The position numbers were made by a program, and so were the translations under genes. DNA of 39,868 nucleotides from Macrostomum lignano (taxonomy: Eukaryota): the NCBI GenBank assembly GCA_002269645.1, contig NIVC01002113.1, positions 1 to 39,868 on the forward strand, given 5' to 3'. Below are positions 16,108 to 39,868 of the stretch, in pieces. The notes under the pieces are model-generated. The model was not told the origin of the DNA, made no database searches, and saw only the letters and a program-made list of their open reading frames with translations. Positions within the stretch are counted from its first letter, which is position 1. Each line of letters begins with the position of its first letter.

Positions 16108-16422
16108 GATTGGCCAGCTGTCGCCTCACACCCACCCCACTCCGCGCTGATTGGCCAGCTGTCGCCTCACACCCACCCCACTCCGCGCTGATTGGCCAGC
16201 TGAAATCTCACCCACCCACTCCGCGCTGATTGGCCAGCTGAAACCTCACACCCACCCCACTCCGCGCTGATTGGCCAGCTGAAACCTCACACCCACCCAC
16301 TCGCACTGATTGGCCAGCTGTAGCCTCACACCCGGCCCACTCCTCGCTGAGTAGCCAGATTTAGCCTCACACCCACCCCACTCGGCGCTGATTGGCCAAC
16401 TGAAACCTCACACCCACCCACT
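16108..16422 (+). repeat. 41-bp minisatellite (GATTGGCCAGCTGTCGCCTCACACCCACCCCACTCCGCGCT)n, about 8 units
   Basis: GATTGG recurs at 16108, 16149 and onward. It is the same family as 19216-19580 but inverted. Confidence 0.93.
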
Positions 16423-20900: not shown

Positions 20901-23418
20901 CGATTTAGCGCAGATTTAGCGCCAATTGAACGCCGATTTAGCGCCACATTAGCACCAAATGAGCGCCAATTTAGCGCCACATTTAGTGCCACAGGCAAGA
21001 TATTTCTGGAACAGTATTTTTTTTCAGATTGGATTTTTCTACTAAATAAAATATCTTCTACTGGTAATTTTAAATTCCAGATGGCAGATTCGCAACAGAC
21101 TACTAAAAATCATGCTTATAGTAGTGCATAACGATCAATGAAAGAACAATTGCAGAGTAGTGAAATAATTTTGTGCTTAAAAAAGTTATAGAATAAAAAA
21201 TCAACAACTGACATAATAGACTTACGAATGCTTCCTGGAATTGCATGGGTTAGAATTAACGGTTGAAGTACCAATACTCGTATGTTATAATTAATTAGAT
21301 ACTGTTCAGATTAGATACTATGAGTAGAGAGTATGAAATAAATGTTTATTGTCATTAAGTAAGTAATTAGAGGATATTAAGGAGCAATTACAGCATAGGG
21401 GGACCGTAGCCCAGTGGTCAGGCGCGGCGCTCTGATGTACCAGCGTCCCAGGCTCGATTCCAAGTGCAGTCACATCAATTTGGGGCTAAATTGGAATCTC
21501 GGCTTGGCTCTGCTCGTGCAATTAACGTGCCAACTTAACAAGGGGCCAACGTACACCCAAGGCACAGAGTTTGCATGCCTGACGATTAGAAAGTCAAACC
21601 AGCCCTCCTGTAACTACTATTAATAATATTCAATACGTTCTACTCGTCAGTAGTAAAAAAAGTAAATTATACTCGTAATTACCTGTACAGGCTTGGAGCT
21701 TTCGTAGAATCCAGACCGCACCTTCAAGGTGATATTTCCGCTGGCTTTCCGCATCACCTGTTGCAGCTTCTCTGGTGAGTCAATCGGGATGCCGTTCACT
21801 TCCCTGATGACGTCATAGGGCTTCAGGGTGTTCTGCTGGTCGATCCTGGACCCGGCCATGATGCGCTCTACCACAATGTCCAGACCGCTCTGGCCCGTGT
21901 TCTCATCGTACCATTCGATTGTCCCCACAGTGATGCCCAGGTCCTCTCCTGGCGCCTGGAATGGTCAGTGGCGACTTAGGTCATGAGTTCGATTCCTAAG
22001 CTGGTGGAGTGACTTGTCCGAGCCGATACTGTATGGGCCAACACTCATTGTTATTCGTTGTATCGAAGGCATAGCATTTTGGGAGCGCCATTTTATCAGA
22101 GGGACGCCGTTTTATCAAAGAGGCGCCATTTCATTAAGTAGGGGTGCCATTTCATGGAGTAGGGGCGCCATTTCATTGAGTAGGGACGCCATTTCATGGA
22201 GTAGGGGCGCCATTTCATTGAGTAGGGACGCCATTTCATGGAGTAGGGGCGCCATTTCATTGAGTAGGGGCGCCATTTCATTGAGTAGGGGCGCCATTTC
22301 ATTGAGTAGGGGCACCATTTCATTGAGTAGGTGCGCCATTTCATTGAGTAGGGACGCCATTTCATTGAGTAGGGGCGCCATTTCATTGACTAGGGGCGCC
22401 ATTTTTATTTGAGGGGCGCCATTTCATCAGATGGGGCGCCACACTCGCACCTCTGCCCTCTCACCTTGCTAAAGGCGATCATCTTCTGTGGCCGGCCAAA
22501 CTCGTCTAAATCGTCTTCGCGCGACCCGCGCCAATCCTGACCGTCCGGCGGCTGCCCAATCAGCTCGGAGCCGCCGCCCAGACTGGCGGACAGAGCGCCA
22601 GCGCCTCGGAGGAGGCTGTGGTTCCCGCCCGCCATCTGCTCGCTTTCATCAACGTTGCACTCGACCAGATCGTGGCTGGAGACTCGGCCTAGGGGCGGCT
22701 CGCCCTGACGATGGGACATTTGGTCTGTTGCTAGGGGCGAGGAAGCCGGCTCAGGGTGAGGAGTCTGTTGCTAAGGGGTGAGGAAGTCTGTTGCTAGGGG
22801 GTGACGGAGCCTGTTGCTAGGGATGAGGGGATGAGGAAGTCTGTTGCTAGGAGGTGAGGAAGTCTGTTGCTAGGGGTGACGAAGTCTGTTGCAAGGGATG
22901 AGGGGATGAGGAGTCTGTTTCTAGGGGTGAGAAAGCCTGCTGCTAGGGTTGATGAATTCTGTTGCTATGGGAGGATGAGGAAGTCTGTAGGGATGAAGAA
23001 TGCTGCAAACGGAGCAGAGTATCGGGCAAACCTTATAATTTCGATGTCCGATGTCCTCCAGAGCGTCCACAAAGATGTTCATCCGAGCGGACGCCAGCAG
23101 GTCGTACAGCTCGCAGGCGTCGTCGTTGGACCCGGCGGCCGCAGGTTCGAGGGTGTCCAGAGCGGACCGGAGGGCCTGAATAAAGTCCGTGCCCGCCGCC
23201 TCTGGGAAGGCGCTCTTCTCGATGCCACGGCCGAGTTTTCGTTTCTGTTTCTCCATCCGTCTGAGAGTCTCGTGAGCGGCCACAGCGGCGCGGATCTCGC
23301 GGCTCTGAAGAAAATCAGCGAGCTCCTGCAATGCCGTTTCGCCTTCAAACTGTCGATCGAGCTGTTCGGCCAGATCTGTGAGCAGCCGAACCGATCTTGG
23401 CTTCTTTGATCCCGGCAT
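17906..23418 (-). CDS. p55/MPP-subfamily MAGUK (L27-L27-PDZ-SH3-HOOK-GuK; MPP2/MPP6/varicose-like), 628 aa; exons 23418-23032, 22704-22465, 21955-21683, 20668-20423, 19817-19621, 19196-18992, 18811-18650, 18082-17906
   Basis: All seven introns are GT-AG and the 1887-nt spliced CDS stays in frame. Motifs: PDZ (EDLGITV...IVVERIMAGSRIDQQNTLKPYDVIREVNG), SH3 (YVKALFSYDP...EDPNWWQAR...AGLIPS), HOOK (KKRKVKM), GuK (LVLLLGAPGIGK, IPHTSRPQRDGELNGEKY, GHLYGIKMDT, LILDCAPE, EFKPYVVF) and the family C-terminus QWLPVSWLY. The exon-2 acceptor is the least certain site. Confidence 0.93.
18180..18590. repeat. Degenerate A/C-rich repeat (AAATCCCAAATCA-like) in MAGUK intron 7
   Basis: Recurring CCCAAATCAAAATC motifs. 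Confidence 0.8.
19216..19580 (-). repeat. 41-bp minisatellite filling MAGUK intron 5, about 9 units; inverted copy of the 16108-16422 family
   Basis: The unit GCGCGGAGTGGGGTGGGTGTGAGGCTACAGCTGGCCAATCA is the reverse complement of the 16108 unit, with small differences. Confidence 0.93.
19893..20137. repeat. 15-bp minisatellite (GCCCCTGGTGCTGGC)n, about 16 units, MAGUK intron 4
   Basis: Directly visible period of 15. Confidence 0.95.
20148..20410. repeat. 22-bp minisatellite (GGGACACAGCCCCATACAGCTT)n, about 12 units, MAGUK intron 4
   Basis: Directly visible period of 22; it abuts the 15-bp array and begins about 12 nt from the donor. Confidence 0.95.
20750..20992. repeat. Degenerate (GATTTAGCGCC)-based tandem repeat, MAGUK intron 3
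   Basis: TTTAGCGCC recurs about every 11 or 22 bp. Confidence 0.85.
21398..21630 (+). mobile_element. tRNA-derived SINE in MAGUK intron 3 (antisense to the gene)
   Basis: A box TAGCCCAGTGG (21407-21417) and B box GGCTCGATTCC (21451-21461) at tRNA-like spacing. There is no full cloverleaf; a body of about 170 bp ends in an ACT/TAA-type tail. No TSD was found. Confidence 0.6.
22085..22440. repeat. 21-bp minisatellite (GGGCGCCATTTCATTGAGTAG)n, about 15 units, MAGUK intron 2
   Basis: Period of 21; it produces the MAPLLNE and MKWRPYS ORF repeats. Confidence 0.95.
22722..23000. repeat. Degenerate 22-30-bp repeat (CCCCTAGCAACAGACTTCCTCA on the - strand) filling MAGUK intron 1
   Basis: CTGTTGCTAGG recurs about 10 times on the + strand. 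Confidence 0.85.
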
Positions 23419-25492
23419 TTTTCTTTTATCAGTCAGAAATAACAGCAATATTTTCAATTGCCAATTGTGTCATTAAATTATCAAAGTTGAAATAAAAATT
23501 CATGAACCATAAAAACGTATATTATGTTTATAATTTATTGCAAGATATTTTTATTATTTACAGTAGGGTAGTAGATCATATACTCGTAATGTAAGCTTCA
23601 AGAGTATTCATAAAGTATAAGGCATAATTTGCTCATATATAGACACTATAGTTAATTTAGCAAAAATTATTACATTTAGGGTCTATCATTGAGCGAAAAG
23701 TTAGAATATACAAGATAAAACTAGATAAATTTATACTAAAAGTTAAAAGCACTGAATCTAAAAAAAACATGGATCTTCTAGTTTTTTTATATTTTTATTT
23801 TCAACTCTTCCAAGATATACTATTACTACTTTGCTATAAAATAAATCTGCTTTAATGAATTAATCGCTTAGGAGCATAGCATTTTCAGAAAATTTCAAAA
23901 AGCCTATCCTCAAAGAGGAAAAGCTTTTAATAACTCAAAGAAGTAACTTTCAAGAAAAAAAACCATCAGCTGATGTATAACTTAACTTAAAAATATTTAG
24001 TTAATCACAGTTTAATGGTAAAACTATTGAATGTTTTTATAACAGCAGTCATTTTTATACCTATTATAATCAAGAAACTATTGGTATTTATAAGATAGCC
24101 ACCTGATTCAATAAATATAGCGGAAGTAACACGCGGATAATTATCTTATGCTTTCTTAGAAAAGAGAGAGTTTAAAATTGCATGCCAATACTCAAGCTAA
24201 CAAAAGTACAGGACAAGGCAAACAATAAGGTCATAATATTTTGTTTTATTTCCTCCTTAATAAATTTCTTACAGTAAAATCCTAGAGTTTAACATTTAGA
24301 AGTAAAAATTTACCTAAAAGCTGTCGATCATAAACTGAAATAAAATGCTAGCGTTATATGTAAGCCACCCGACCAGCATGGATTTAATCGGTAGAAAAGG
24401 TAAACGTTTTCTACGATTAGATAGGGTAGATGGCATGTCGACTGCCAGCATAACATGCTTTCCTTCTGATTAAAAGCGGACTGTATATACTTGTATTGGG
24501 CAGTTATGGCGCGCAATTCAAAAGCCTACGCACAACCAATATTATAATGGCTCGACATATTTAATTAGTATAGGGCATTGTGTTAGTATGTATGAATTCA
24601 AGACCTAGACTAATAAAGCAGTTTGTGTCTAGAGTCGAAAACTTTGGAAATGTGTCGCCCTAGCTTGCACAAAAAGCCATGTATGACATGACTGAATGAA
24701 ATTTAATTAGGAGGTTAATGATTGTAAAATAAACTAGCTACTTGGACCTCTTGACAATGACAATAAGGATGAAATGGTCCTGTTGCAGGCAGATATTAAT
24801 TGGCTTAAAAAAAGTAAAAGCTTGATGGCTAGCTAGCTAGGTGGCCTTGGCTCACCCAGTTATTGGCCTTATATTGGCCTTCTTATCAATATGTGGGCCA
24901 TTTTGTATTGCATTCTGCTTTAATCTACTTTGTTTTTCTTCTTTATTGCCAGGTATTTAGTATAATTTTTTAGCTCTTAGTTGTATTCTTTATTTTAATA
25001 TCACTCTATACTTGTACCATGAAAAGAAACACAAAAGGCCTTGTCAATTTTAGGCCTATGATAGGTAGCTAGCTATGTTATTTTATTTTAGTAATAGGCC
25101 TATAGCTATTAAGAGTAGGCCTACTAAATTATTAGTAATAATAGGCTAAAATAGCTAGCCTATTTTAGACCCTATTATATTTTATGCTTCTTGTCTAACA
25201 ATCTAATAATTGTTGTAGGCCAATATTATGAAATGTATAGGCCTAGCTATAGAAAAAGAAAAAGAAGCCAATAACCTTCCTAATGAATAAATTAATTAAT
25301 ATTAGTTCAGTTGTGTATTTACTTTATATTTATTGTCATATGAATTATATACTTATATTGCATTTAGCCTAGGCCTATCTACTCTAGTCTGCCTATCCTC
25401 TACCTATGTCTGTTCTCTCAATCATTATATTTTTACTTTTTCCCTCTCTTAATTCCTTTATATCATGCTTCTCAATTATCTCCCATCTTTGC

Positions 25493-27755
25493 CCCTCCCC
25501 AATTCCCTCCTATCCTGCCTATCCCCAATTCCCTCCTATCCTGCCCACCCCCAATTCCCTCCTATCCTGCCCACCCCCAATTCCCTCCTATCCTGCCCAC
25601 CCCCCAATTCCTTCCTATCCTGCCCATCCCCCAATTTCCGCCATCCTGCCCTTCAATCTTTTCACCCTTGGGTTTTAAGCTATAAACCCAAGGCAATTCA
25701 AAATCTAGAAATGGATTTCAAATTGGAAAATTGAATTCAGCATTTCAAGCACCTTTCAAAAAGGCGAAACTATAGAGCTAGAAAATATGGAACTATTTAA
25801 CTACCTTAAGTTCAATAAGTTATAGTTGGATATTGCCAACTCTTTTCCAGGTGCCTCTATCTAGCTAATGCTAACAAAAATGTTGCAAGGTGTACTTTAA
25901 TATTATATTTGTTCTAGTAAGCAGTTTTTCTGTGTCTCCCATTCTACCCCACCTTTCCCTCCCGTTCTACCCTTCCATTCCTTCCCATTCTACCCCTCCA
26001 TTCCCTCCCATTCTACCCCCACCATTCCCTCCCATTCTACCCTTCCATTCCCTCACATTCTACCCCTCCATTCCCTCCCATTCTACCCTTCCATTCCTTC
26101 CCATTCTACCCTTCTATTCCTTCCCATTCTACCCCTCCATTCCCTCACATTCTACCCCCTCCATTCCCTCCCATTCTACCCTTCCATTCCCTCCCATTCT
26201 ACCCTTCCATTCCCTCACATTCTACCCCCTCCATTCCCTCCCGTTCTACCCTTCCATTCCCTCCCGTTCTACCCTTCCATTCCCTCCCATTCTACCCTTC
26301 CATTCCCTCACATTCTACCCCCTCCATTCCCTCCCGTTCTACCCTTCCATTCCCTTCCCGTTCTACCCTTCCATTCCCTCCTATTCTCTATACCCTCCTT
26401 ATACCCTCAATACTCTCCCTATACCCTCTATACCCTCCATATACCCTCCGTATACTCTCCATACCCTCCATATTTTTTCTATACCCATACATGGCCTCCT
26501 TGTACCCTCTATGCCTTCCATATACCCTCAATACTCTCCCTATACCCTCCATACCCTTCTATACCCATTCTTACCCTCCATATACCCTCCATACCATCCC
26601 TATACCCTCCATACCATTCCTATACCCTCAATACCATCCCTATACCCTCCATACCATCCCTATACTCTCCTTATAACCTCTCCATACCCTCCATACCCTC
26701 CATACTTTTTCTATACCCACCCATGGACTCCCTGTACCCTCTATGCCCTCCATATACCCTCCATACTCTCCCTATACCCTCCATACTCTCCCTATACCCT
26801 CCATACCCTTCTATACCCATTCATACCCTCCATATACCCTCCATACCATCCCTATACTCTCCTTATAACCTCTCCATACCCTCCATACCCTCCATACTTT
26901 TTCTATACCCACCCATGGACTCCCTGTACCCTCTATGCCCTCCCTATACTCTCCATACCCTCCTACTTTTCCTATCCTTCCCGCGTTATACTTTTCCCTA
27001 TCCAGCCTCTACTATTCCCTCTTTCCACCTCCAGCGCCTCCCCCTCTCTAGCCCCTACCCTCTCTTCCTTTACTTTCCAGCCCCCATCCTCTACTCCCCT
27101 CCAGCGCCCACCCTCTTCTCCCATCAGCCCCTACCCTCTCCTCCACTCCAGCGCCCTCCCTCTCCTCCACTCCAGCGCCCTCCCTCTCCTCCACTCCAGC
27201 GCCCTCCCTCTCCTCCACTCCAGCGCCCTCCCTCTCCTCCACTCCAGCGCCCTCCCTCTCCTCCACTCCAGCGCCCTCCCTCTCCTCCACTCCAGCGCCC
27301 TCCCTCTCCTCCACTCCAGCGCCCTCCCTCTCCTCCACTCCAGCGCCCTCCCTCTCCTCCACTCCAGCGCCCTCCCTCTCCTCCACTCCAGCGCCCTCCC
27401 TCTCCTCCACTCCAGCGCCCTCCCTCTCCTCCACTCCAGCGCCCTCCCTCTCCTCCACTCCAGCGCCCTCCCTCTCTCCACTCCAGCGCCCTCCCTCTCC
27501 TCCACTCCAGCGCCCTCCCTCTCCTCCACTCCAGCGCCCTCCCTCTCCTCCACTCCAGCGCCCTCCCTCTCCTCCACTCCAGCGCCCTCCCTCTCCTCCA
27601 CTCCAGCGCCCTCCCTCTCCTCCACTCCAGCGCCCTCCCTCTCCTCCACTCCAGCGCCCTCCCTCTCCTCCACTCCAGCGCCCTCCCTCTCTTCCACTCC
27701 AGCGCCCTCCCTCTCCTCCACTCCAGCGCCCTCCCTCTCCTCCACTCCAGCGCCC
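25493..27755. repeat. Left-arm tandem arrays: ~25-bp (25493-25645), ~23-bp CCATTCTACCCTTCCATTCCCTC (25940-26380), 10-11-bp TATACCCTCCA (26385-26965), 24-bp CTCCACTCCAGCGCCCTCCCTCTC (27135-27755, about 26 units)
   Basis: Directly visible; C-rich on the + strand. Confidence 0.93.
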
Positions 27756-28856
27756 ACCCTCTACTCTCCTTGGTTATCCCTTCGTTACGCTCTTCCCTCC
27801 TCTCTGTTTTACTTACTGTGTCATGCATAACCCGTCTGCTACAGTGTTTTTAAATAGCCTTTTATACCCTCCTCTTTCCCTAGCCCCTCCTCCCCCGGCG
27901 GCTCCCCTTCTCGTAGCTCTGCTAATAAAATCGTAATTCTTCTTCTCTTCAGAATAATTTGCCCAGCTGCGAACTGTGATGGTGCATACCGGGTACTCGC
28001 AATTTAAAAAGCGTATGCTTCTTACTGATTTACTGATTTAATTCCGACGCAACCAAGCAAATCGTTTACTTTCAAGTCCGTGCATTTTTCTTGTGTTTAA
28101 CTTTTCACCGTTCGGCGTTAATGCCGTGTGGCGTTGGTGTAATACTATCGCGAAATTCAATTTCCAATGTCATTATCTAACTATTGTCGCTTTTCTGTAT
28201 TACAACTATATACAATACTTCTGCATTTATTGACGTAACATTGTGCCAATAATGTCACATTGTGTGGCCTCAATATGAATCTGTTGCTGAATGCAACTTA
28301 TAGCCCATTGACCAGTTTAATCGCTTGAAATACATTGTAATGTAATACTGTATCGCTTTTGGCAATCGAAACGAGACTTTAGCCAGACTCCTCACTGATC
28401 CAAATGCTCCTCAAGCAAAGGTACGAGTATATGGAAAGCAGACTGAGCTCCGCAGACTTAGTATATTTGATCTTCGGATCGCGGATAGAACCAAGGAAAT
28501 CTTGGTACGTAAATAAAATTGGAGTCACTTTTCCTACTTCCACTTTCCCTGCTCTTTCCCTGACCACAGTCTGTGCCCCAGGCTCAAGTTAGACCAACGC
28601 AAAATACTAACCTGAATAGGAAGCAAGCAACTCACTTCCCACTCTAGTCTTTTTCTGCCACTGTTGTCTTGCAATACTCGCAAAGATCTCGTATGGCGTC
28701 CTATTTGAATTGGCGCGTCTCGTTGTTAACGTAGTCGAAAGCAATACTGGTGCCAATTATTTGTGTCGATCAAGTTTCCTAGAGAATGATTTGTTGATAA
28801 CTGTATATTCGCTGTCTTAGAGCTGCACGCTGTGTTTAACCATTACTTTGTCGTAG

Positions 28857-29075
28857 AGGAGCTGATGAAGGGAGGCGTTGGGGCGGACCTTTTGGAGGGG
28901 CGGAGCTGATGGGGGGCGGTAGCGGCGGAGCTTTTGGAGGGGCGGAGCTGATGGGGGGCGGTAGCGGCGGAGCTTTTGGAGGGGCGGAGCTGATGGGGGC
29001 GGTAGGAGCGGAGCTGATGGGGGGCGGTAGGGGCGGAGCTGATGGAGGTGGATCGAAGGGGCGGAGTTGATGGAG
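28857..29075 (+). repeat. G-rich degenerate repeat containing several GGGGCGGAGC GC boxes
   Basis: GGGGCGGAGCT recurs with GGGGGGCGGTAG spacers. Confidence 0.8.
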
Positions 29076-29282
29076 GATGGTTTTTCTATTTATTCGACCG
29101 ATTGAAGTATACACAACGTGTACGTGTATTCGAGCTACGCTGGTAGTGTAGTTGTTTGTCTAGTATAGTTTATACATGTGTATACTGTAATGTACATGTA
29201 GTCTCACAATCTCATCAAAAGCTAGACATTTTATTTCTTTGGTTAGTAATCGTGGGGATATTAGATCCACATGCAGCTATCG

Positions 29283-30394
29283 TCATTCGGTGAAGTTATG
29301 AACCCAGTCCAGCTCGACCCAGTTGCACAGATTCTCAATTGGATTGCCAGTCCATGGTGCGGATGTTGTTCTCAGCAAGCTTCGGATCGTTGTCCTGCTG
29401 AAACTGGCAGCGCATCTACAGCCTCTGTCCATGATGCCCTCAATGCGAGTTATTGGCCCAGGTCCAGCTCTGGAGAATGCAGCCCACACCATGACATTGC
29501 CATCTACATGCTTCATGGAACCAACGGGGCACCTGGAATCGAATTCCTCACCAGCTCGGTGGCGCACATACCGGCGACCATCAGAACCAGTGCGGGAAAA
29601 TTTGCTCTCATCACTCCAGATGACCTTGGCCCCAGTCCTGGGGTGTAGAGCTTGCATGTTGCTTCGCCCAGTTCAAGCGCCGCTTCCGGTTTTTGTCGGA
29701 GATGAATGGCTTCTTCCTAGCAATGCGGCCATGCAGTCCGGCAGCTACCAGACGGCGGCGGACAGTCATGGGGTGCAGCTGGACACCAAAAGTTTACGGC
29801 TGATGTCCACAGCGGTTAGCCGACGGTTGGACTCGGGCATTCGCACAATTCGTCGATCCAGTCGGTGGTCAGTTTTCGGTGCCCTGCCAGGTCTTGAGCC
29901 ACAGTCTGTTTTGCCAGTGCTGCTGTGGCGCCTGAGTGCTTGCTGGACGCACGTTTTCTGCGTACGTGACTTTGGCACGCTGGGAAACTCCTTGGTCGAA
30001 CAGGGCCCTGATTTTCCTACACGATTCAGGCGATAGAGCTTTGCCTTTCCCATTCTAGGAGAGTTCGAGATCATTTTTGCTTGGAGTTGTATTGAACTTG
30101 ATGTTTTGGACTTTGGAATCAGCAGGGGCCCCACTGTTGTAGCACCTACCTTTTAGCCCAATTAATTAAGTGGTCTTATTACTGTGTGACTTATCAAATT
30201 CGATTGTGAGATAAGGACTTCAATTAAACAGACTCAATTGTGAGTAATTACACAACACATAACTATAATTTTACTGATTGATACCACGGTTATCTATAAC
30301 TGATTAGATTAAATGCTTCCGCAATCTGTGAAGGTTATGAAACTATAAAAGTTCGAATTTGTGTTAGGTGGTCTTAATTCATTGTGCGCCACTT
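29283..30394 (-). mobile_element. Decayed Tc1-family transposon (5' TIR of IR/DR type plus frameshifted, internally deleted transposase) nested in the foldback centre
   Basis: N-terminal MGKAK...RPGRAPKTDHRLDRRIVR and catalytic VIWSDESKF, VMVWAAFS, FQQDNDPK (shifted frame) and NPIENL. The TIR AAGTGGCGCACAATGAATTAAGACCAC ends at 30394 next to TA (30395-30396), with an inner DR at 30170-30190. The 3' TIR was not found. Confidence 0.88.
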
Positions 30395-30595
30395 TATGTA
30401 TAATGTTGCTGAGTACTTTCAAGGCTCAATCCAATTACATGTACCATGTCGGAGAGGCCGTCTAAATATGGCTAAAATTACACACTAAAAATAAAGCCTG
30501 AGAATTTGCATTTACATTGAGATAAGTAGTAGACCTTGGAACTGGTTAACAGGCCTCAAAACGAGGCAAGTGTTTTAAATTGAAACTAAACTGAT

Positions 30596-33014
30596 TGATG
30601 GGTTTCGACCTTCGGGCTCCTTGTTAGGGAAGCCTTCGGGCCTCAGGCTCAGAAATAAATCAATTAGAGACCTGGCCCCCCACTCCTGTCAGATGGTCAG
30701 CCCCATGGTAACTTGATCGTGTGGCGAGCAGTCTAGGTCCTATAGCTAAGAGAGGGACAGCGAGAGACGAGCAGGGAGAATTTTGAAAGTAGAAATTAGC
30801 TAATCCGCAGATCAACTAACTTGCTGCCACCAGCCCGTGCGCCCTGGCTCACCACACCGGGACTCTCGAAATCGGGCTTCCGACTAGAAGGGGCTTTGCA
30901 CTTACCTGCCAACTAGTGTCTTTTTGCTGTCAATCTCGAAGTCATAGCCGATGATAAGGGACACTGCTGGGACTAGATCGCGTTGGCCATGCAGGTACAG
31001 AGGGGACTTGTGCAGGGGATTCTTGCGGTGGCGAGTCTATGGGGTAGCTACATGTACTATTACATTGCTAAATACGAAGATATGTACTTTTAGCCTTCAA
31101 CGCGCCAACTAGCCTCTCATAGCGCTGATGATAGGCTAACTCGAACCTCAGAGACCGCATGATTCATTTACCCGAGCCGCTTGGCTACCCTAGAGTGCAC
31201 AAAGTACATCTCTGGCGCCGATTCTGCACTTTTGGCAGTTTTGCTCACTGATTTGTTAGATTGGTCGACTGAGAACTGCCTTGCCATTGGTCCACTGTGA
31301 CCGGCGCCTACTAGCTTAGCTACTCATCTGAGCCATCGGCGAACAAAGAAATAAAGCCGACAAAGATAACTGTTAGATTTAACCTTCTCCTTAATTCACT
31401 TCACACTTTAGATTGAATTGGAGTCTTAGACTACTGCTGGCAGTATTATTGAATGATTCCTGCCTCAGCAACAGCACTACTGAACAAAATGAGCAAAAGT
31501 GTGCGCCTAATTCAGCTACTGCAACAGGGGACAGAAAAGGGATCACCCAATCAAGCAAGTCTAGGTAGCCTCTCACCCAACCAATCAGAAACTCAACAGC
31601 CGGAGACCAGGTATTCCACAGTGACCGAATCGGCTCGATGCTCTGCAGCTGTAGACTCGGGATGATGCTGTCACAATCTTCGCTGTTAGCTAGCAGGTGA
31701 TGCTCTTAACTGGATGTTCGCTGCTGTCGACCGGGGGACTCGTTCTTGATGATGATGGGGGAAGTTGCAATCCGGGGATCAAGAAACGACGGTCGTGCTC
31801 CGGGAACCAGAAGTTGCGCGCTGGGCCCGAGCCAAAGTAAGAAGAAGTAGTGTCCGAGCGGGCCAAAAACTCCGGTTTAAATAGCCGCCAACTGGACCGT
31901 AGTTTGTTATAACGGAACACGTCGATTCTGATTGGCTGAGCCGTTTTGTTAAAATGAGCGCCGAATTTTCTGATTGGCTAAGCTCGTTGCTACCCAGAAT
32001 CACGTGACCGAGAGATCCTATCAGTTCCCACAGGGTCGTAAAAAGATGACAGGTGCGGCCATAAATCACTCAAAATCGCAACAAAATGATTTATGATTTT
32101 TCGCGTAGGATTGACAGAAATTAATGAAAAAATATACATTAGAAAGCTCTTATTAAATAGAAAGTGAAGATAATGAAGAGAAATCGCTAATCCCAAGGTA
32201 CTTTTAGGGGTAAAACGCATAGCTGTCAAAGCTGTCACACGCTTGAGTGAATCCGAACAATAGGCTTTGACCTCATAAATCTTGATGGCCTGTCAAAATG
32301 ATGAGAAAAAAGCTACCGCCCGCATCCTCTCAGACCATCTGGCGCCCGCTTCAACACTGAGTGAGGCGCAGGTGGCTGTCAGATCAGCTTCGAAAGCGAT
32401 GATTTATGACCCAAAAAGCTGCGCCTGAGTTATTATGACTACTAGTATGGCCAGACATTATATCTAGTATAGATTCTATGACAATTTGCAGAAAAAAGAT
32501 AAAAATGCCCCTTGCCCACTGTTAGTAGGCTAGTAAGTTTCGAGCCCATGTGCTAGCGCGGGATTTGGGAAAAAGTGCGTCCTCATCATGATACTGAAAT
32601 TGAGCATGAAAAAGCTCATTGAGCATCATTTTCTCTATAATGCAGCTGCTATCTCACGGGAGCTGCAAACACAGCTTTTAAATTGGGCTGAGTAGCTGAT
32701 TGGGCCGCCTTGTTTCCACGGCGCCTCCGGTGTGCAGGGAATACAGGTAGCTGCATGGTTTGGTGAGCCGGGGCGCACGGACTGGTGGCAGCGGGTTAGT
32801 TAATCCGCGGGTTAGCTAATCTCTACCTTTCAAATTCTCCCTGCTTGTCTCTCGACTCGCTGTCTTCCCTTAGCTATAGGACCTTGCTGCTCGCCACACA
32901 ATCCAGCTACCACGGGGCTGACCATCTGACAGGAGTGAGAAGCCAGAGTTCTAAGTGATTCATTTCTGAGTTCTGAGGCCCAGAGCTACAGGCTTAAAAA
33001 GGCCGAACCCATCA
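30596..33014. mobile_element. Unclassified 2.4-kb element bounded by diverged inverted repeats of about 260 bp (30596-30858 and 32757-33014)
   Basis: For example, CACTCCTGTCAGATGGTCAGCCCC and GGTCCTATAGCTAAG on the left are reverse complements of GGGGCTGACCATCTGACAGGAGTG and CTTAGCTATAGGACC on the right. The two copies differ at many positions. No TSD and no recognisable ORF were found. Confidence 0.65.
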
Positions 33015-34084
33015 GAATGTTGCGGAGCTGCGTCATGCCATTGAAAACGCTCATTCTCTAGGAAACTTGATCGACACAAATAATTGGCACCAGTATTGCT
33101 TTCGACTACGTTAACAACGAGACGCGCCAATTCAAATAGGACGCCATACGAGATCTTTGCGAGTATTGCAAGACAACAGTGGCAGAAAAAGACTAGAGTG
33201 GGAAGTGAGTTGCTTGCTTCCTATTCAGGTTAGTATTTTGCGTTGGTCTAACTTGAGCCTGGGGCACAGACTGTGGTCAGGGAAAGAGCAGGGAAAGTGG
33301 AAGTAGGAAAAGTGACTCCAATTTTATTTACGTACCAAGATTTCCTTGGTTCTATCCGCGATCCGAAGATCAAATATACTAAGTCTGCGGAGCTCAGTCT
33401 GCTTTCCATATACTCGTACCTTTGCTTGAGGAGCATTTGGATCAGTGAGGAGTCTGGCTAAAGTCTCGTTTCGATTGCCAAAAGCGATACAGTATTACAT
33501 TACAATGTATTTCAAGCGATTAAACTGGTCAATGGGCTATAAGTTGCATTCAGCAACAGATTCATATTGAGGCCACACAATGTGACATTATTGGCACAAT
33601 GTTACGTCAATAAATGCAGAAGTATTGTATATAGTTGTAATACAGAAAAGCGACAATAGTTAGATAATGACATTGGAAATTGAATTTCGCGATAGTATTA
33701 CACCAACGCCACACGGCATTAACGCCGAACGGTGAAAAGTTAAACACAAGAAAAATGCACGGACTTGAAAGTAAACGATTTGCTTGGTTGCGTCGGAATT
33801 AAATCAGTAAATCAGTAAGAAGCATACGCTTTTTAAATTGCGAGTACCCGGTATGCACCATCACAGTTCGCAGCTGGGCAAATTATTCTGAAGAGAAGAA
33901 GAATTACGATTTTATTAGCAGAGCTACGAGAAGGGGAGCCGCCGGGGGAGGAGGGGCTAGGGAAAGAGGAGGGTATAAAAGGCTATTTAAAAACACTGTA
34001 GCAGACGGGTTATGCATGACACAGTAAGTAAAACAGAGAGGAGGGAAGAGCGTAACGAAGGGATAACCAAGGAGAGTAGAGGGT

Positions 34085-36120
34085 GGGCGCTGGAGTGGAG
34101 GAGAGGGAGGGCGCTGGAGTGGAGGAGAGGGAGGGCGCTGGAGTGGAAGAGAGGGAGGGCGCTGGAGTGGAGGAGAGGGAGGGCGCTGGAGTGGAGGAGA
34201 GGGAGGGCGCTGGAGTGGAGGAGAGGGAGGGCGCTGGAGTGGAGGAGAGGGAGGGCGCTGGAGTGGAGGAGAGGGAGGGCGCTGGAGTGGAGGAGAGGGA
34301 GGGCGCTGGAGTGGAGGAGAGGGAGGGCGCTGGAGTGGAGGAGAGGGAGGGCGCTGGAGTGGAGGAGAGGGAGGGCGCTGGAGTGGAGGAGAGGGAGGGC
34401 GCTGGAGTGGAGGAGAGGGAGGGCGCTGGAGTGGAGGAGAGGGAGGGCGCTGGAGTGGAGGAGAGGGTAGGGGCTGATGGGAGAAGAGGGTGGGCGCTGG
34501 AGGGGAGTAGAGGATGGGGGCTGGAAAGTAAAGGAAGAGAGGGTAGGGCTAGAGAGGGGGAGGCGCTGGAGGTGGAAAGAGGGAATAGTAGAGGCTGGAT
34601 AGGGAAAAGTATAACGCGGGAAGGATAGGAAAAGTAGGAGGGTATGGAGAGTATAGGGAGGGCATAGAGGGTACAGGGAGTCCATGGGTGGGTATAGAAA
34701 AAGTATGGAGGGTATGGAGGGTATGGAGAGGTTATAAGGAGAGTATAGGGATGGTATGGAGGGTATATGGAGGGTATGAATGGGTATAGAAGGGTATGGA
34801 GGGTATAGGGAGAGTATGGAGGGTATAGGGAGAGTATGGAGGGTATATGGAGGGCATAGAGGGTACAGGGAGTCCATGGGTGGGTATAGAAAAAGTATGG
34901 AGGGTATGGAGGGTATGGAGAGGTTATAAGGAGAGTATAGGGATGGTATGGAGGGTATAGGGATGGTATTGAGGGTATAGGAATGGTATGGAGGGTATAG
35001 GGATGGTATGGAGGGTATATGGAGGGTAAGAATGGGTATAGAAGGGTATGGAGGGTATAGGGAGAGTATTGAGGGTATATGGAAGGCATAGAGGGTACAA
35101 GGAGGCCATGTATGGGTATAGAAAAAATATGGAGGGTATGGAGAGTATACGGAGGGTATATGGAGGGTATAGAGGGTATAGGGAGAGTATTGAGGGTATA
35201 AGGAGGGTATAGAGAATAGGAGGGAATGGAAGGGTAGAACGGGAGGGAATGGAGGGGTAGAATGGGAGGGAATGGAAGGGTAGAATGGGAGGGAATGGAA
35301 GGGTAGAATGGGAGGGAATGGAAGGGTAGAACGGGAGGGAATGGAAGGGTAGAACGGGAGGGAATGGAGGGGGTAGAATGTGAGGGAATGGAAGGGTAGA
35401 ATGGGAGGGAATGGAAGGGTAGAATGGGAGGGAATGGAGGGGGTAGAATGTGAGGGAATGGAGGGGTAGAATGGGAAGGAATAGAAGGGTAGAATGGGAA
35501 GGAATGGAAGGGTAGAATGGGAGGGAATGGAGGGGGTAGAATGTGAGGGAATGGAAGGGTAGAATGGGAGGGAATGGTGGGGGTAGAATGGGAGGGAATG
35601 GAGGGGTAGAATGGGAAGGAATGGAAGGGTAGAACGGGAGGGAAAGGTGGGGTAGAATGGGAGACACAGAAAAACTGCTTACTAGAACAAATATAATATT
35701 AAAGTACACCTTGCAACATTTTTGTTAGCATTAGCTAGATAGAGGCACCTGGAAAAGAGTTGGCAATATCCAACTATAACTTATTGAACTTAAGGTAGTT
35801 AAATAGTTCCATATTTTCTAGCTCTATAGTTTCGCCTTTTTGAAAGGTGCTTGAAATGCTGAATTCAATTTTCCAATTTGAAATCCATTTCTAGATTTTG
35901 AATTGCCTTGGGTTTATAGCTTAAAACCCAAGGGTGAAAAGATTGAAGGGCAGGATGGCGGAAATTGGGGGATGGGCAGGATAGGAAGGAATTGGGGGGT
36001 GGGCAGGATAGGAGGGAATTGGGGGGTGGGCAGGATAGGAGGGAATTGGGGGGTGGGCAGGATAGGAGGGAATTGGGGGATAGGCAGGATAGGAGGGAAT
36101 TGGGGAGGGGCAAAGATGGG
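34085..36120. repeat. Right-arm tandem arrays, mirror of the left arm; the 24-bp array (34085-34470) has only about 16 units
   Basis: G-rich on the + strand: GGAGTGGAGGAGAGGGAGGGCGCT, GGAGGGTAT, GGAATGGAAGGGTAGAATGGGAG and GGGCAGGATAGGAGGGAATTGGGG units. Confidence 0.93.
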
Positions 36121-38187
36121 AGATAATTGAGAAGCATGATATAAAGGAATTAAGAGAGGGAAAAAGTAAAAATATAATGATTGAGAGAACAGACATAGGT
36201 AGAGGATAGGCAGACTAGAGTAGATAGGCCTAGGCTAAATGCAATATAAGTATATAATTCATATGACAATAAATATAAAGTAAATACACAACTGAACTAA
36301 TATTAATTAATTTATTCATTAGGAAGGTTATTGGCTTCTTTTTCTTTTTCTATAGCTAGGCCTATACATTTCATAATATTGGCCTACAACAATTATTAGA
36401 TTGTTAGACAAGAAGCATAAAATATAATAGGGTCTAAAATAGCTAGCCTATTTTAGACCATATACATTTTATAGACTAATAATTTAGTAGGCCTACTCTT
36501 AATAGCTATAGGCCTATTACTAAAATAAAATAACATAGCTAGCTACCTATCATAGGCCTAAAATTGACAAGGCCTTTTGTGTTTCTTTTCATGGTACAAG
36601 TATAGAGTGATATTAAAATAAAGAATACAACTAAGAGCTAAAAAATTATACTAAATACCTGGCAATAAAGAAGAAAAACAAAGTAGATTAAAGCAGAATG
36701 CAATACAAAATGGCCCACATATTGATAAGAAGGCCAATATAAGGCCAATAACTGGGTGAGCCAAGGCCACCTAGCTAGCTAGCCATCAAGCTTTTACTTT
36801 TTTTAAGCCAATTAATATCTGCCTGCAACAGGACCATTTCATCCTTATTGTCATTGTCAAGAGGTCCAAGTAGCTAGTTTATTTTACAATCATTAACCTC
36901 CTAATTAAATTTCATTCAGTCATGTCATACATGGCTTTTTGTGCAAGCTAGGGCGACACATTTCCAAAGTTTTCGACTCTAGACACAAACTGCTTTATTA
37001 GTCTAGGTCTTGAATTCATACATACTAACACAATGCCCTATACTAATTAAATATGTCGAGCCATTATAATATTGGTTGTGCGTAGGCTTTTGAATTGCGC
37101 GCCATAACTGCCCAATACAAGTATATACAGTCCGCTTTTAATCAGAAGGAAAGCATGTTATGCTGGCAGTCGACATGCCATCTACCCTATCTAATCGTAG
37201 AAAACGTTTACCTTTTCTACCGATTAAATCCATGCTGGTCGGGTGATGTAAGCATTAAAAAACCCGGATTATTATTAGTACAACAAATAGATTGCAAAAT
37301 TAAAAAATAACAAAGCATTAGAATATCAAAGACGTATTTTTTGCATTACCCAACACAATAAACTCAATAATTCATTTTTCTAAGTGTTATAAGTAAAACA
37401 ATTTTGTTTTGTGTACACAGCTACGAGTATTTAACATTCGTTACATCTGTGATTTTTAAATTCATTTTGCTCTTTAAGCAATAATTATGGTTCATTCCGT
37501 AGAAACAACTGAAAGGTGGTGGAGACAGAAATATTTCTAAGACAAAAATAAAGCTTTCAGTATAAAATTATAGAGAAAAAAGTTGTTAGCCAAATTGGTG
37601 TGGCATTGGCCAAAAAGCGAGGCGATTGCATCACAACCCACTGTTCCTAAACCTAAAACCAATGTCCATCACACTGTTTTTGCATTGTATTACTTACCTA
37701 AGATTACCAGAAACACAAGCTTAGATTTTTTATTGCTCCGACCCGCTTCTGTTTTTTTGAGTGTCAAAGTTCTGATTTAAGTTCAACTTAAGCACTTTTT
37801 ATATTTAAATTTTGTTGACTTTAATTTATTTTGCTGGCAGTTCTTCATTCACAAATATAATACCTTTACATATATGATATCCTAAGAAATAAATATATGT
37901 AAACCTAAAGTCAATAGGCAATATAAATAACTTGTGTATTATGTATGTATTTATATATTGTGTATTTATATAATTGTCAAAATATACACCTAATGTCACA
38001 TATTCAAAGACTTTACCTAGATTTTTACAAATATTTTACAATTTAGTCCGCCCAAATTAATACAATTAAGCTATTCAAATCTTGCGACTGCTAATGAGTT
38101 TTGCATTTTTGTAGCATTACTAAAAACGAATAGATAATCAATTCATGACCGGACTCGCTTAGCGACATCCCAGCAACAAGCCAGGCA

Positions 38188-39173
38188 ATGTCGCGAGTTG
38201 GCAATCTGCCAATGGAGAGTCTGTCAGTCTCGGTTGGCGGTCCGAGCTCCTCTGTCTCTCGCAACAGGACGGAGCTGAGAAGCAACAGCAGCGGTGGAAT
38301 TCGCCAGCTGTCCGCCTCGGCCTATCCGGGCTCGCCAACCGGCTGGGAGCTGGGCCGGCGACCCTCCGTTGTTTTCGGCGAGTCTGAGACAACAGAGGAG
38401 CTGGCCAAGACTCGCTTCATGCGCAGCAATAAGCAGCAGAAAAAGCACGAGGTGATTTCAGCTTCACTTCCGGAAATTTCGGATAAAATAACATACTTCC
38501 GGTCACTTTAGATAGACTATCTGATGTACTTCCGGTCACATTAGATAGACTATCTATGCACTTCCGGTCACGTTTGATAGACTATCCATGCACTTTCGGT
38601 CACGTTAGACTATCTGCTATACTTCCTGTCACATTTGATAGACTATCTACAGTATTTACTTCCGGTCACGTTTGATAGACTATGTACTTCCGGTCACGTT
38701 AGATAGACTATCTATGCACTTCCGGTCTTGGTATATAAGATCACATGTTGTCTTCTACACTACCAAATCATTTCAAATATACTTAGATTTCATTTCCGGT
38801 TACCGAAAAAAAGATCGAAAACCATCCTTTCTACACCACTTAATCCCCACCAGGAGCGCATGGACAAAAACCGTCAGGCTGTTGAGGACCAACTTCGTGA
38901 GTTCATGAAGCGCCACTTCCACCGGAAGGAGTGCTGCCTGTTCGAAGAGAAAGATGCGGGAAAGTGCGCCTGCGGCGAGGTGCGAGACAAGCACGACAGG
39001 CAGTTTCTGCAGACGGGCAGCACGGAGAAATGGGCGGCTGAGAAGCATCTGCAGAAGGTCGGCCGCACCAACGCATTTGGCAGGATTAAACTGATTCAAC
39101 GAAGGGATTTGACAACCGGGAGCCGATCAACTTTGTGCGACTCTGCGACGAGACGACATGGGAATGATACTGG
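38188..39173 (+). CDS. TRPM-family cation channel, 5' exons (38188-38451 and 38854-39173); the gene continues beyond the window
   Basis: Exon 2 encodes FMKRHFHRKECCLFEEKDAGKCACGEVRDKH...EKWAAEKHLQKVGRTNAFGRIK...INFVRLCDETTWE. This matches the TRPM N-terminal pattern (KREC..C.CG...W...HT....T.A.G.I.F...Y.RL..DT). Exon 1 ends GAG|GTGATT and exon 2 starts CACCAG|GAG in phase 0. Indels near 39090 and 39165 break the frame, possibly from low-quality consensus. Exon 1 is less certain than exon 2. Confidence 0.8.
38495..38727. repeat. About 32-bp minisatellite (ACTTCCGGTCACGTTAGATAGACTATCTATGC)n, about 8 units, TRPM intron 1
   Basis: ACTTCCGGTCAC recurs throughout. Confidence 0.9.
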
Positions 39174-39868
39174 GTGAGTCACAGATGGGCTGTGATACTG
39201 GCGTGAGTCACGGATGGGCTGTGATACTGGGTGAGTCACAGATGGGCTGTGATACTGGGTGAGTCACGGATGGGCCTGTTGATACTGGCTGTGAGTCACG
39301 GATGGGCTGTGATACTGGGGAGTCACGGATGGCTGTGATACTGGGTGAGTCACGGATGGGCTTGATACTGGGTGAGTCACGGATGGGCTGTGATACTGGG
39401 TGAGTCACAGATAGGCTGTGTGATACTGGGTGAGTCACAGATGGGCTGTGATACTGGGTGAGTCACAGATGGCTGTGATTACTGGGGAGTTCACAGATGG
39501 CATGATACTGGGTGAGTCACAGGATGGCAATGATACTGGCGTGAGTCACAGATGGGCAATTGATACTGGTGTGAGTCACAGATGGCAATGATACTGGTGA
39601 GTCACAGTATGGGCAATGATACTGGGTGAGTCACAGATGGGCAATGATACTGGGTGAGTCACAGATGGGCAATGATACTGGGTGAGTCACAGATGGGCAA
39701 TGATACTGGGTGAGTCACAGATGGGCAATGATACTGGGTGAGTCACACTATGGCAATGATACTGGGTGAGTCACAGATGGGCAATGATACTGGGTGAGTC
39801 ACAGATGGGCAATGATACTGGTGAGTCCACAGATGGGCAATGATACTGGGTGAGTCACAGATGGGCAA
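39163..39868 (+). repeat. About 28-bp minisatellite (GATACTGGGTGAGTCACAGATGGGCAAT)n, about 25 units, starting at the TRPM exon-2 donor and running off the window
   Basis: Directly visible; the units show scattered indels. Confidence 0.95.

What the first reader, a model, noticed from the sequence alone, without database searches (positions are those of the whole stretch)
24358..37253. Giant foldback transposon: 4.2-4.4-kb inverted arms, CACCC termini, exact 8-bp TSD
Seen: arms 24366-28789 and 33051-37245 are near-identical reverse complements that differ mainly in repeat copy number, and ATGTAAGC flanks both ends. The 4.26-kb centre is mostly nested elements. Known: foldback elements with internally repetitive arms include Drosophila FB (Mutator-related), Galileo (P superfamily) and sea-urchin TU elements, with arms usually well under this size. 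8-bp TSDs occur with P, hAT, Merlin and Zisupton transposases, and Tc1 makes TA, so the nested Tc1 is not the mobiliser. Inference: a recently mobile, non-autonomous member of a possibly undescribed giant foldback family that carries cargo.
Basis: partly seen in the sequence, partly recalled or inferred. Interest (0 to 1): 0.9.

Follow-up and report, generated by a model that had tools for sequence, protein, structure and literature searches.

The report
Large foldback-type DNA transposon insertion
A 12.9-kb non-coding mobile element with two almost identical 4.2-4.4-kb inverted arms sits between two animal genes; it is an unusually long-armed example of the known "foldback" transposon type, and nothing available here shows which enzyme moves it.

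Summary
An element at 24366-37245 ends in inverted CACCCGACCAGCATGG motifs. It is flanked by an exact 8-bp direct repeat, ATGTAAGC, and no other repeat length fits. Its arms (4424 and 4195 nt) show no substitutions in about 2.5 kb of non-tandem sequence. They differ mainly by ten units of a 24-bp minisatellite and by 1-bp changes in C runs.

Each arm has an outer unique domain, four minisatellite blocks and an inner unique domain. This is the classic foldback layout, as in Tetris, Galileo and Tm1. The 4.26-kb centre holds only a broken Tc1 transposase remnant, an older 2.4-kb inverted-repeat element and a minisatellite. No usable transposase was found.

The best reading is a non-autonomous cut-and-paste foldback transposon moved in trans. 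It lies in the roughly 2.5-kb region between a PALS2/MPP-like gene and a TRPM-like gene that point away from each other.

- The superfamily is open.
- "Recently mobile" is not shown. Arm-to-arm gene conversion explains the identical arms equally well.
- "Undescribed family" could not be tested. The source genome and its close relatives were not in any collection I could search.

Verdict: a new member of a known kind, of moderate interest.

The parts
24358..24365 (.). Left copy of the 8-bp target-site duplication, ATGTAAGC
   Evidence: Only a length of 8 gives an exact direct repeat at the two junctions.
24366..24381 (+). Left terminal motif CACCCGACCAGCATGG (element tip)
   Evidence: two hits in the window at up to 3 mismatches, one at each tip, in inverted orientation.
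24382..24422 (.). Subterminal 41-nt local palindrome just inside the tip; mirrored in the right arm
   Evidence: DNA fold of 24366-24485 gives -18.4 kcal/mol, z = -3.2 against shuffles. Its role as a binding site is inferred.
24366..25489 (+). Left arm, outer unique AT-rich domain (about 1.12 kb). Includes five copies of the palindromic octamer TAGGCCTA at 25051-25378.
   Evidence: TAGGCCTA occurs 5 times per arm and nowhere else in the window. No Pfam hit in its reading frames.
25490..25651 (+). Left arm, 26-bp C-rich minisatellite (6.2 copies)
   Evidence: Mirror array at 35948-36112.
25936..26387 (+). Left arm, 23-bp minisatellite (19.4 copies)
   Evidence: Mirror array at 35213-35663.
26388..26963 (+). 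Left arm, 20-bp minisatellite organised in 192- and 232-bp higher-order units
   Evidence: Mirror array at 34637-35212.
27076..27766 (+). Left arm, 24-bp minisatellite with 28.9 copies, ten more than in the right arm
27767..28789 (+). Left arm, inner unique domain (about 1.02 kb). The inverted repeat ends abruptly at 28789.
   Evidence: (27476-28789 is 100% complementary to 33051-34364).
28790..33050 (.). Non-palindromic centre (middle domain), 4261 bp
28858..29073 (+). 42-bp (17/25-bp) G-rich minisatellite in the centre
29286..30152 (-). Tc1-family transposase remnant. It is split over at least three reading frames, has an internal deletion and lacks its 3' end.
   Evidence: HTH_Tnp_Tc3_2, E = 5.5e-17 for 29614-29793. 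(144 Tc1-type proteins at E <= 1e-10, best 60% identity). Frame layout.
30590..33017 (.). Nested element of about 2.4 kb with inverted ends of about 270-400 nt that are only about 86% identical. Boundaries are approximate. No protein family was detected.
33051..37245 (-). Right arm, mirror image of the left arm: inner unique domain 33051-34073, 24-bp array 34074-34525 (18.9 copies), 20-bp array 34637-35212, 23-bp array 35213-35663, 26/27-bp array 35948-36112, outer unique domain 36113-37245
37230..37245 (-). Right terminal motif (CCATGCTGGTCGGGTG on the + strand)
37246..37253 (.). Right copy of the target-site duplication, ATGTAAGC

Best explanation
The feature is one insertion of a non-autonomous class II (cut-and-paste) transposon of the foldback structural type.

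Inferred mechanism:
- A DDE-type transposase encoded elsewhere in the genome would recognise the two identical tips (CACCCGACCAGCATGG plus the adjacent 41-nt palindrome), and possibly repeated motifs further in.
- It would excise the whole 12.9-kb unit and join it to a target cut with an 8-bp stagger. Repair of that stagger produced the ATGTAAGC duplication.
- The arms follow the foldback plan of outer unique domain, minisatellite blocks and inner unique domain. The arrays change length by slippage or unequal exchange, which accounts for the ten-unit difference.
- The near-identity of the arms reflects either a very recent origin of this copy or continuing arm-to-arm gene conversion. I rate the two about equally likely.
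- The centre is carried debris: a dead Tc1, an old inverted-repeat element and a minisatellite.

The superfamily is unresolved. Candidates that fit an 8-bp duplication are P, hAT, Mutator/Phantom, Zisupton, Merlin and Novosib. The 5'-CA start leans slightly towards P-like, hAT-like or Zisupton-like ends. That foldback elements are mostly Mutator-related leans the other way.

Shown: the structure, the termini, the duplication, the absence of coding capacity and the genomic position. Inferred: mobilisation in trans, what the transposase binds, and how the arms stay alike.
For: - Exact 8-bp direct repeat flush against the ends of the inverted repeat; no other length fits; chance about 6e-5.
- The terminal 16-mer is found only at the two tips.
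- Arms are collinear and 97-100% complementary over 4.2-4.4 kb.
- Three-domain arms with tandem arrays, as described for Tetris (flanking, tandem-repeat and inner domains plus a non-coding middle domain, PMC4079207), Galileo (PMC3573991) and Tm1 (PMC3169594).
- No transposase other than the Tc1 remnant in 62 reading frames of at least 40 aa from the non-tandem parts. The long open frame across the arrays has no homologue.
- Unique gene-bearing sequence continues on both sides: PALS2/MPP-like exons and a TRPM-like N-terminus.
Against: - Only one copy is visible, so mobility as a family is not shown.
- No empty site, second copy or transposase could be retrieved.
- The termini match no superfamily signature that I could test.
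- The arms are far longer, and more alike, than is typical of described foldback families (Tm1 arms average 93% identity; the longest Galileo arms are 95.2% identical).
- The pattern of differences between the arms (homopolymer indels and array copy number, with almost no substitutions) is also what long-read consensus error would produce. The true arms may therefore be even closer to identical.
Confidence: 0.8

Rival explanations
1. Composite or macro-transposon. Two inverted copies of an ordinary 4.3-kb element flank 4.26 kb of ordinary DNA, and a transposase acted on the two outer ends to move the whole block.
For: The centre looks like ordinary repeat-rich DNA of this genome, with a dead Tc1, an old inverted-repeat element and a minisatellite. 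The arm-centre boundary is abrupt.
Against: The inner ends of the arms (…CCTAGAGAATGA at 28789) carry no copy of the terminal motif. That motif occurs only twice in the window even at 3 mismatches. Each arm therefore has only one transposon end and is not a complete element.
Confidence: 0.08
2. An inverted duplication that did not arise by transposition, for example by fold-back repair or template switching. The 8-bp flanking repeat would then be a coincidence or a repair microhomology.
For: The arms are almost identical and the arm-centre boundary is sharp. A small local palindrome with a flipped centre at 25136-25160 shows that template-switch mutations do occur here.
Against: Fold-back duplication does not place an exact direct repeat flush against both outer ends of the palindrome (chance about 6e-5). 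It also does not leave unrelated unique sequence on both sides.
Confidence: 0.05
3. Assembly artefact: a chimeric fold-back long read or a mis-join created a false palindrome.
For: The arms differ almost only by homopolymer length and tandem copy number, which is the error profile of long reads.
Against: Read-level fold-back chimeras have no spacer or only an adapter-sized one. This structure has a 4.26-kb asymmetric centre. The palindrome is internal to the window, bounded by a duplication, and followed on both sides by coherent gene sequence.
Confidence: 0.03

Closest known systems
Tetris (Drosophila virilis foldback element; PMC4079207)
   Same: Non-autonomous. Arms are built of an outer flanking domain, a tandem-repeat domain and an inner domain around a variable non-coding middle domain. 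Target-site duplications are 8-10 bp. Its transposase is unknown.
   Different: Tetris arms reach 1,735 bp and hold one type of repeat of about 220 bp. Here the arms are 4.2-4.4 kb and hold four different 20-26-bp minisatellite blocks. Sequence relatedness could not be tested.
Galileo (P superfamily, Drosophila; PMC3573991, PMC3688188)
   Same: Long, internally repetitive inverted arms whose length varies by tandem-repeat copy number and by recruitment of internal sequence. The longest arms are in non-autonomous copies. Both start with 5'-CA (for Galileo this is from my own memory and was not checked).
   Different: Galileo makes 7-bp duplications, its arms are at most 1.26 kb, and its longest arms are 95.2% identical. 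It encodes a THAP-type P transposase in complete copies. None is seen here.
Drosophila FB and Mutator/Phantom-linked foldback elements such as Tm1 of Meloidogyne (PMC3169594)
   Same: Composite arms with tandem repeats and arm-length asymmetry caused by repeat number. Non-coding and nested-insertion forms are common. The 8-10-bp duplications include 8 bp.
   Different: In Tm1 and FB the short tandem repeats (about 14 bp; 10/20/31 bp) begin within a few bases of the tip. Here the outer 1.1 kb is unique sequence. Tm1 usually makes 9-bp duplications and its arms average 93% identity. No Phantom or Mutator-like transposase was found here.
Sea-urchin TU elements (Liebermann et al. 1983; details from my own knowledge, paper not held)
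   Same: Long inverted arms with an outer repetitive and an inner non-repetitive domain, heterogeneous middle segments, and reportedly 8-bp duplications.
   Different: TU arms are under 1 kb, with 15-bp repeats at the outer end. The host here is not close to any annotated echinoderm: the best MAGUK matches are only 41-43% identical. Sequence comparison was not possible.

Membership tests
Foldback-type transposons (a structural class, not a clade) | Long terminal inverted repeats that make up most of the element | tested here: met
   The arms of 4424 and 4195 nt make up 67% of 12,880 bp.
Foldback-type transposons (a structural class, not a clade) | Arms that are modular and internally repetitive, with arm length varying by repeat copy number | tested here: met
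   Four minisatellite blocks per arm. The arms differ by ten 24-bp units.
Foldback-type transposons (a structural class, not a clade) | Target-site duplication flanking the whole unit | tested here: met
   Exact 8-bp ATGTAAGC.
Foldback-type transposons (a structural class, not a clade) | Multiple dispersed copies (a family) | not testable with these tools
   The rest of the window holds no second copy.
Mutator / Phantom superfamily (includes Drosophila FB and Tm1) | 8-10-bp target-site duplication | tested here: met
   8 bp here. Muta1 makes 8 or 9 bp (PMC5225508).
Mutator / Phantom superfamily (includes Drosophila FB and Tm1) | A Mutator-like or Phantom transposase in autonomous copies with the same ends | not testable with these tools
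   This copy has none. No other copies were available.
P superfamily (P, 1360, Galileo) | 7-9-bp target-site duplication | tested here: met
   8 bp here. P makes 8 bp, Galileo and 1360 make 7 bp, BuT5 makes 8-9 bp (PMC3698922).
P superfamily (P, 1360, Galileo) | A THAP-domain transposase, with its binding sites in the arms | not tested
   This copy has no transposase. The binding motif of the unknown enzyme cannot be defined.
hAT superfamily | 8-bp target-site duplication | tested here: met
hAT superfamily | Terminal 5'-YARNG and short (about 10-25 bp) inverted ends (rule taken from established knowledge) | tested here: not met
   The tip reads CACCC, with C rather than A or G at position 3 and C rather than G at position 5. 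The arms are 4 kb long.
Tc1/mariner | TA target-site duplication | tested here: not met
   The flanks read …AAGC|CACCC and GGGTG|ATGT…. The nested Tc1 is broken.
Zisupton / Merlin / Novosib | 8-bp (Merlin 8-9-bp) duplication plus the superfamily's own transposase | tested here: inconclusive
   The duplication length fits. No transposase was available. A G-rich Merlin-type tip is not seen (that rule is from my own knowledge).

The most novel reading that the evidence does not exclude
This may be the first visible copy of a foldback lineage whose kilobase-scale arms are kept, or regenerated, identical. That could happen by hairpin-templated repair or conversion coupled to transposition. Its transposase would belong to a superfamily not yet linked to foldback architecture (hAT-like, Zisupton-like or new), in a poorly sampled animal lineage whose genome is saturated with minisatellites.
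Probability: 0.1. Interest if true: 0.7.

Novelty: new member of a known kind. Interest (0 to 1): 0.35.

Why it matters
Foldback elements are among the least understood DNA transposons. They drive inversions and other rearrangements in Drosophila (Galileo, BuT5, FB) and can seed satellite DNA (Tetris).

A clean copy with arms over 4 kb that are essentially identical would be useful in three ways:
- It tests whether arm identity comes from recent origin or from concerted evolution.
- It tests how far arm length can grow in a cut-and-paste element. Transposition efficiency is reported to fall above about 6 kb (PMC6431247).
- It is a marker for finding the responsible transposase in a poorly sampled animal genome.

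Locally, the insertion enlarges a shared 5' region of about 2.55 kb between a PALS2/MPP-like gene and a TRPM-like gene to 15.4 kb, which could affect the regulation of both. None of this changes current concepts unless the genome-wide follow-up turns up something unexpected.

Tried and rejected
**Searches for other copies or the source genome, all empty**
- Exact look-up of a 467-aa window reading frame.
- Homologue search with the 646-aa open frame across the arm arrays (8000 candidates, none significant).
- Terminal 26-mer in metagenome contigs.
- The L27 exon of the neighbouring gene in metagenome contigs (435 pattern hits, none confirmed).
- Terminal 20-mer in prokaryotic genome contigs.
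- Terminal 18-mer in viral contigs. The single hit does not extend beyond the 18 bases and is a chance match.

**Source organism**
- The neighbouring MAGUK gene matches spider and shrimp PALS2 at only 41-43% identity and a tapeworm protein at 34%.
- The closest relatives of the Tc1 remnant are short metagenome contigs that name no organism.
- The source is therefore an animal, but its lineage remains unknown.

**Hidden transposase**
- A Pfam scan of 62 reading frames found only the Tc1 helix-turn-helix domain (earlier scans).
- Rfam found nothing in the window.

**Ideas considered and dropped**
- Each arm as a complete element: rejected, because the inner ends carry no terminal motif.
- The centre as a single insertion at the apex of a perfect palindrome: no duplication at 28789/33051.
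- Nested elements inside the unique arm domains: none found.
- Relatedness of the arm arrays to other arrays in the window: only CT/GA low-complexity matches.

**Papers**
- Two papers were not held.


Full report

Yes, at exactly the stated coordinates.
- The inverted-repeat search returns a collinear series of blocks that are 97-100% complementary and pair 24366-28789 with 33051-37245. The main blocks are 1314, 771, 702 and 493 nt at 100% and 393 nt at 97%.
- A global alignment of the left arm (4424 nt) with the reverse complement of the right arm (4195 nt) gives about 4170 identical positions and 12-15 mismatches.
- The mismatches fall in two patches. One is 25136-25160, a 9-bp indel next to a small local palindrome whose centre is flipped between the arms. 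The other is 26310-26345, inside the 23-bp minisatellite.
- There are seven 1-bp indels. Six lie in runs of four to six C; the seventh (26355) doubles a T inside the 23-bp array.
- One gap of about 240 bp equals ten units of the 24-bp array: 28.9 copies at 27076-27766 against 18.9 at 34074-34525.
- Outside the 25136-25160 patch, the roughly 2.5 kb of non-tandem arm sequence has no substitution.
- The 16-mer CACCCGACCAGCATGG is found only at the two tips, inverted, even with three mismatches allowed.
- ATGTAAGC abuts both tips. Flank lengths from 2 to 12 nt were tried and only 8 gives an exact direct repeat. The inverted repeat does not run into the flanks. The chance of an 8/8 match, given the AT-rich flank composition, is about 6e-5.

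**2. Anatomy**

Each arm, read from tip to centre, contains the following parts.
- The 16-nt tip, followed directly by a 41-nt local palindrome. The DNA fold of the first 120 nt is -18.4 kcal/mol, z = -3.2.
- A 1.12-kb AT-rich unique domain. It includes five copies of the palindromic octamer TAGGCCTA within 330 bp. This octamer occurs nowhere else in the window.
- Four different C/T-rich minisatellite blocks with units of 26, 23, 20 and 24 bp. The 20-bp block is organised in 192- and 232-bp higher-order repeats.
- A 1.02-kb unique inner domain.

Tandem arrays cover 40-42% of each arm. The inverted repeat stops abruptly at 28789/33051.

The 4261-bp centre contains:
- a 42-bp G-rich minisatellite at 28858-29073;
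- a Tc1-family transposase remnant on the minus strand at 29286-30152;
- an element of about 2.4 kb at roughly 30590-33017, whose inverted ends are only about 86% identical.

The Tc1 remnant is spread over at least three reading frames, has an internal deletion and lacks its 3' end. It matches HTH_Tnp_Tc3_2 at E = 5.5e-17, and a frame-joined conceptual translation finds 144 Tc1-type proteins, the best 60% identical.

I screened 62 stop-to-stop reading frames of at least 40 aa from all non-tandem parts against Pfam, and only the Tc1 helix-turn-helix domain was found. The 646-aa open frame across the arrays has no homologue. It is open only because the arrays are pyrimidine-rich. The element therefore encodes no usable transposase.

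**3. Surroundings**

- To the left, on the minus strand, lie exons of a PALS2/MPP-type MAGUK gene: L27 at 22924-23418, PDZ at 21650-21964, and guanylate-kinase exons at 19606-19830, 18839-19249 and 17909-18139. The evidence is hits to PALS2 proteins at E = 1e-31 to 1e-36 and a match of the C-terminus to MPP5 structures.
- To the right, on the plus strand, an open frame at 38707-39174 matches residues 30-100 of TRPM channels.
- The two genes point away from each other. Their putative start codons (about 23418 and 38860) are 15,442 bp apart, or about 2.55 kb without the insertion.
- The element therefore sits in a shared 5' intergenic region. From my own knowledge, P elements, hAT elements and Mutator-like elements favour such locations. 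I treat this as circumstantial.
- The window as a whole is rich in minisatellites, which cover 25% of the sequence outside the element. It also contains other inverted-repeat structures. Internal repetitiveness is thus partly a property of this genome and not only of this element.

**4. What it is and how it probably works**

The exact 8-bp direct repeat lies flush against sharply defined inverted termini. Unrelated gene-bearing sequence lies on both sides. This is the signature of one concerted integration of the whole 12.9-kb unit by a transposase that makes 8-bp staggered target cuts.

The arm architecture is the one described for foldback elements. Tetris has flanking, tandem-repeat and inner domains around a non-coding middle domain (PMC4079207). 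Galileo arms grow by tandem-repeat expansion and by recruiting internal sequence, and the longest arms occur in non-autonomous copies (PMC3573991). Tm1 arms differ in length between the two ends because of repeat number (PMC3169594).

I therefore read this as a non-autonomous foldback-type class II element mobilised in trans (confidence 0.8). Recognition of the tip and palindrome by the transposase, a role for TAGGCCTA or the arrays as extra binding sites, and array length change by slippage are inferences.

**5. Which superfamily?**

This is unresolved.
- An 8-bp duplication fits P (7-9 bp, PMC3698922), hAT, Zisupton, Merlin and Novosib (own knowledge).
Most foldback elements have been assigned to Mutator/Phantom (PMC4079207; PMC3169594).
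- The tip CACCC fails the hAT YARNG rule.
- The CA start is common in P-like and several other superfamilies.
- Tc1/mariner is excluded, because there is no TA duplication.

**6. How recent?**

- Zero substitutions in about 2.5 kb of unique arm sequence means the arms were last identical very recently.
- From established knowledge, inverted repeats a few kilobases apart undergo arm-to-arm gene conversion, as in the human Y-chromosome palindromes. Such conversion gives the same picture in an old insertion.
- The centre carries clearly old material: inverted ends about 86% identical and a decayed Tc1. Either the centre travelled in as cargo, or the insertion is old and the arms are being homogenised.
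- Both nested elements lie in the centre, although the arms are the larger target. This fits conversion or selection purging insertions from the arms, or carried cargo. It does not decide between them.
- An intact 8-bp duplication says little about age.
- The arm differences (homopolymer length, array copy number) are also typical of long-read consensus error. They should not be over-read.

**7. Rivals**

- A composite of two complete elements is unlikely, because the inner arm ends carry no terminal motif.
- A fold-back duplication without transposition does not explain the flush 8-bp direct repeat.
- An assembly chimera is unlikely. The centre is a 4.26-kb asymmetric sequence, the structure is internal to the window, and both flanks are coherent gene sequence.

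**8. Known or new?**

The kind is known.
- What stands out is scale and arm identity. The arms of 4.2-4.4 kb compare with at most 1.26 kb in Galileo and at most 1.74 kb in Tetris. Arm identity is about 99.7-100%, against an average of 93% in Tm1 and 95.2% in the longest Galileo arms. The outer domain is a long stretch of unique sequence, not repeats starting at the tip.
- From my own knowledge, Drosophila FB arms can also reach several kilobases, so length alone is not unprecedented.
- Whether the family is catalogued could not be tested, because neither Repbase/Dfam nor the source genome was available. Every attempt to reach related DNA failed.
- The host is an animal whose MAGUK gene is at most 43% identical to anything in the protein collection. 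A species-specific, uncatalogued family is therefore likely, though unremarkable in itself.

I file it as a new member of a known kind, with interest 0.35.

Noticed in passing
window 17909-23418 (- strand) and 38707-39174 (+ strand): The element lies between a PALS2/MPP-like MAGUK gene (L27, PDZ and guanylate-kinase exons) and a TRPM-like channel gene that point away from each other. Their putative start codons are 15.4 kb apart, or about 2.55 kb without the insertion.
   Followed up: partly
window 38495-38727: A 32-bp tandem repeat (about 7 copies), each unit carrying ACTTCCGG (an ETS-like core), lies 130-360 bp upstream of the putative TRPM-like start codon. It may be a repeated promoter motif.
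   Followed up: no
window 16102-16422 and 19226-19580: Two arrays of the same 41-bp unit (TGATTGGCCAGCTG…CACCCACCCCACTCCGCGC) lie in inverted orientation in introns on either side of a guanylate-kinase exon (18839-19249). They form a second foldback-like arrangement around coding sequence.
   Followed up: partly
window 2690-4454: A 1.77-kb element with inverted arms of about 390 nt (97% complementary) and tips reading GCCTCCCCTGAAGA…. No target-site duplication is recognisable.
   Followed up: partly
whole window: Minisatellites with 11-45-bp units cover about 25% of the sequence outside the element, including a 1.3-kb array of a 21-bp unit at 8703-10035 and a 0.86-kb array of a 43-bp unit at 10368-11225. 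The genome itself appears prone to minisatellites.
   Followed up: partly
window 25490-27766 and 34074-36112: Canonical G-quadruplex motifs (G3+N1-7, four runs) number 17 and 18 in the two arms, always on the G-rich strand, against 2 in the other 27 kb. The arms have extreme GC skew, up to 0.92 in absolute value.
   Followed up: partly
window 25051-25378 (mirror image in the right arm's outer unique domain, 36113-37245): The palindromic octamer TAGGCCTA occurs five times per arm within about 330 bp and nowhere else in the window. It is a candidate protein-binding cluster.
   Followed up: partly
window 25136-25160 versus 36440-36475: The only complex difference between the arms is a 9-bp indel next to a local palindrome of about 29 bp whose central bases are flipped (AGCTAGCCT against AGGCTAGCT). 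This is the mark of a hairpin or template-switch mutation.
   Followed up: partly
window 4774-6764 (+ strand): Long open frames of 480 and 229 aa have only marginal Pfam matches (7tm_1, E = 0.03). They may be exons of an unannotated membrane protein.
   Followed up: no
L002-L006 (metagenome contigs): The closest relatives of the nested Tc1 remnant (50-60% amino-acid identity) are intact 283-340-aa transposases on short ENA and JGI metagenome contigs. Related active Tc1 elements therefore exist in unsampled environmental eukaryotes.
   Followed up: partly
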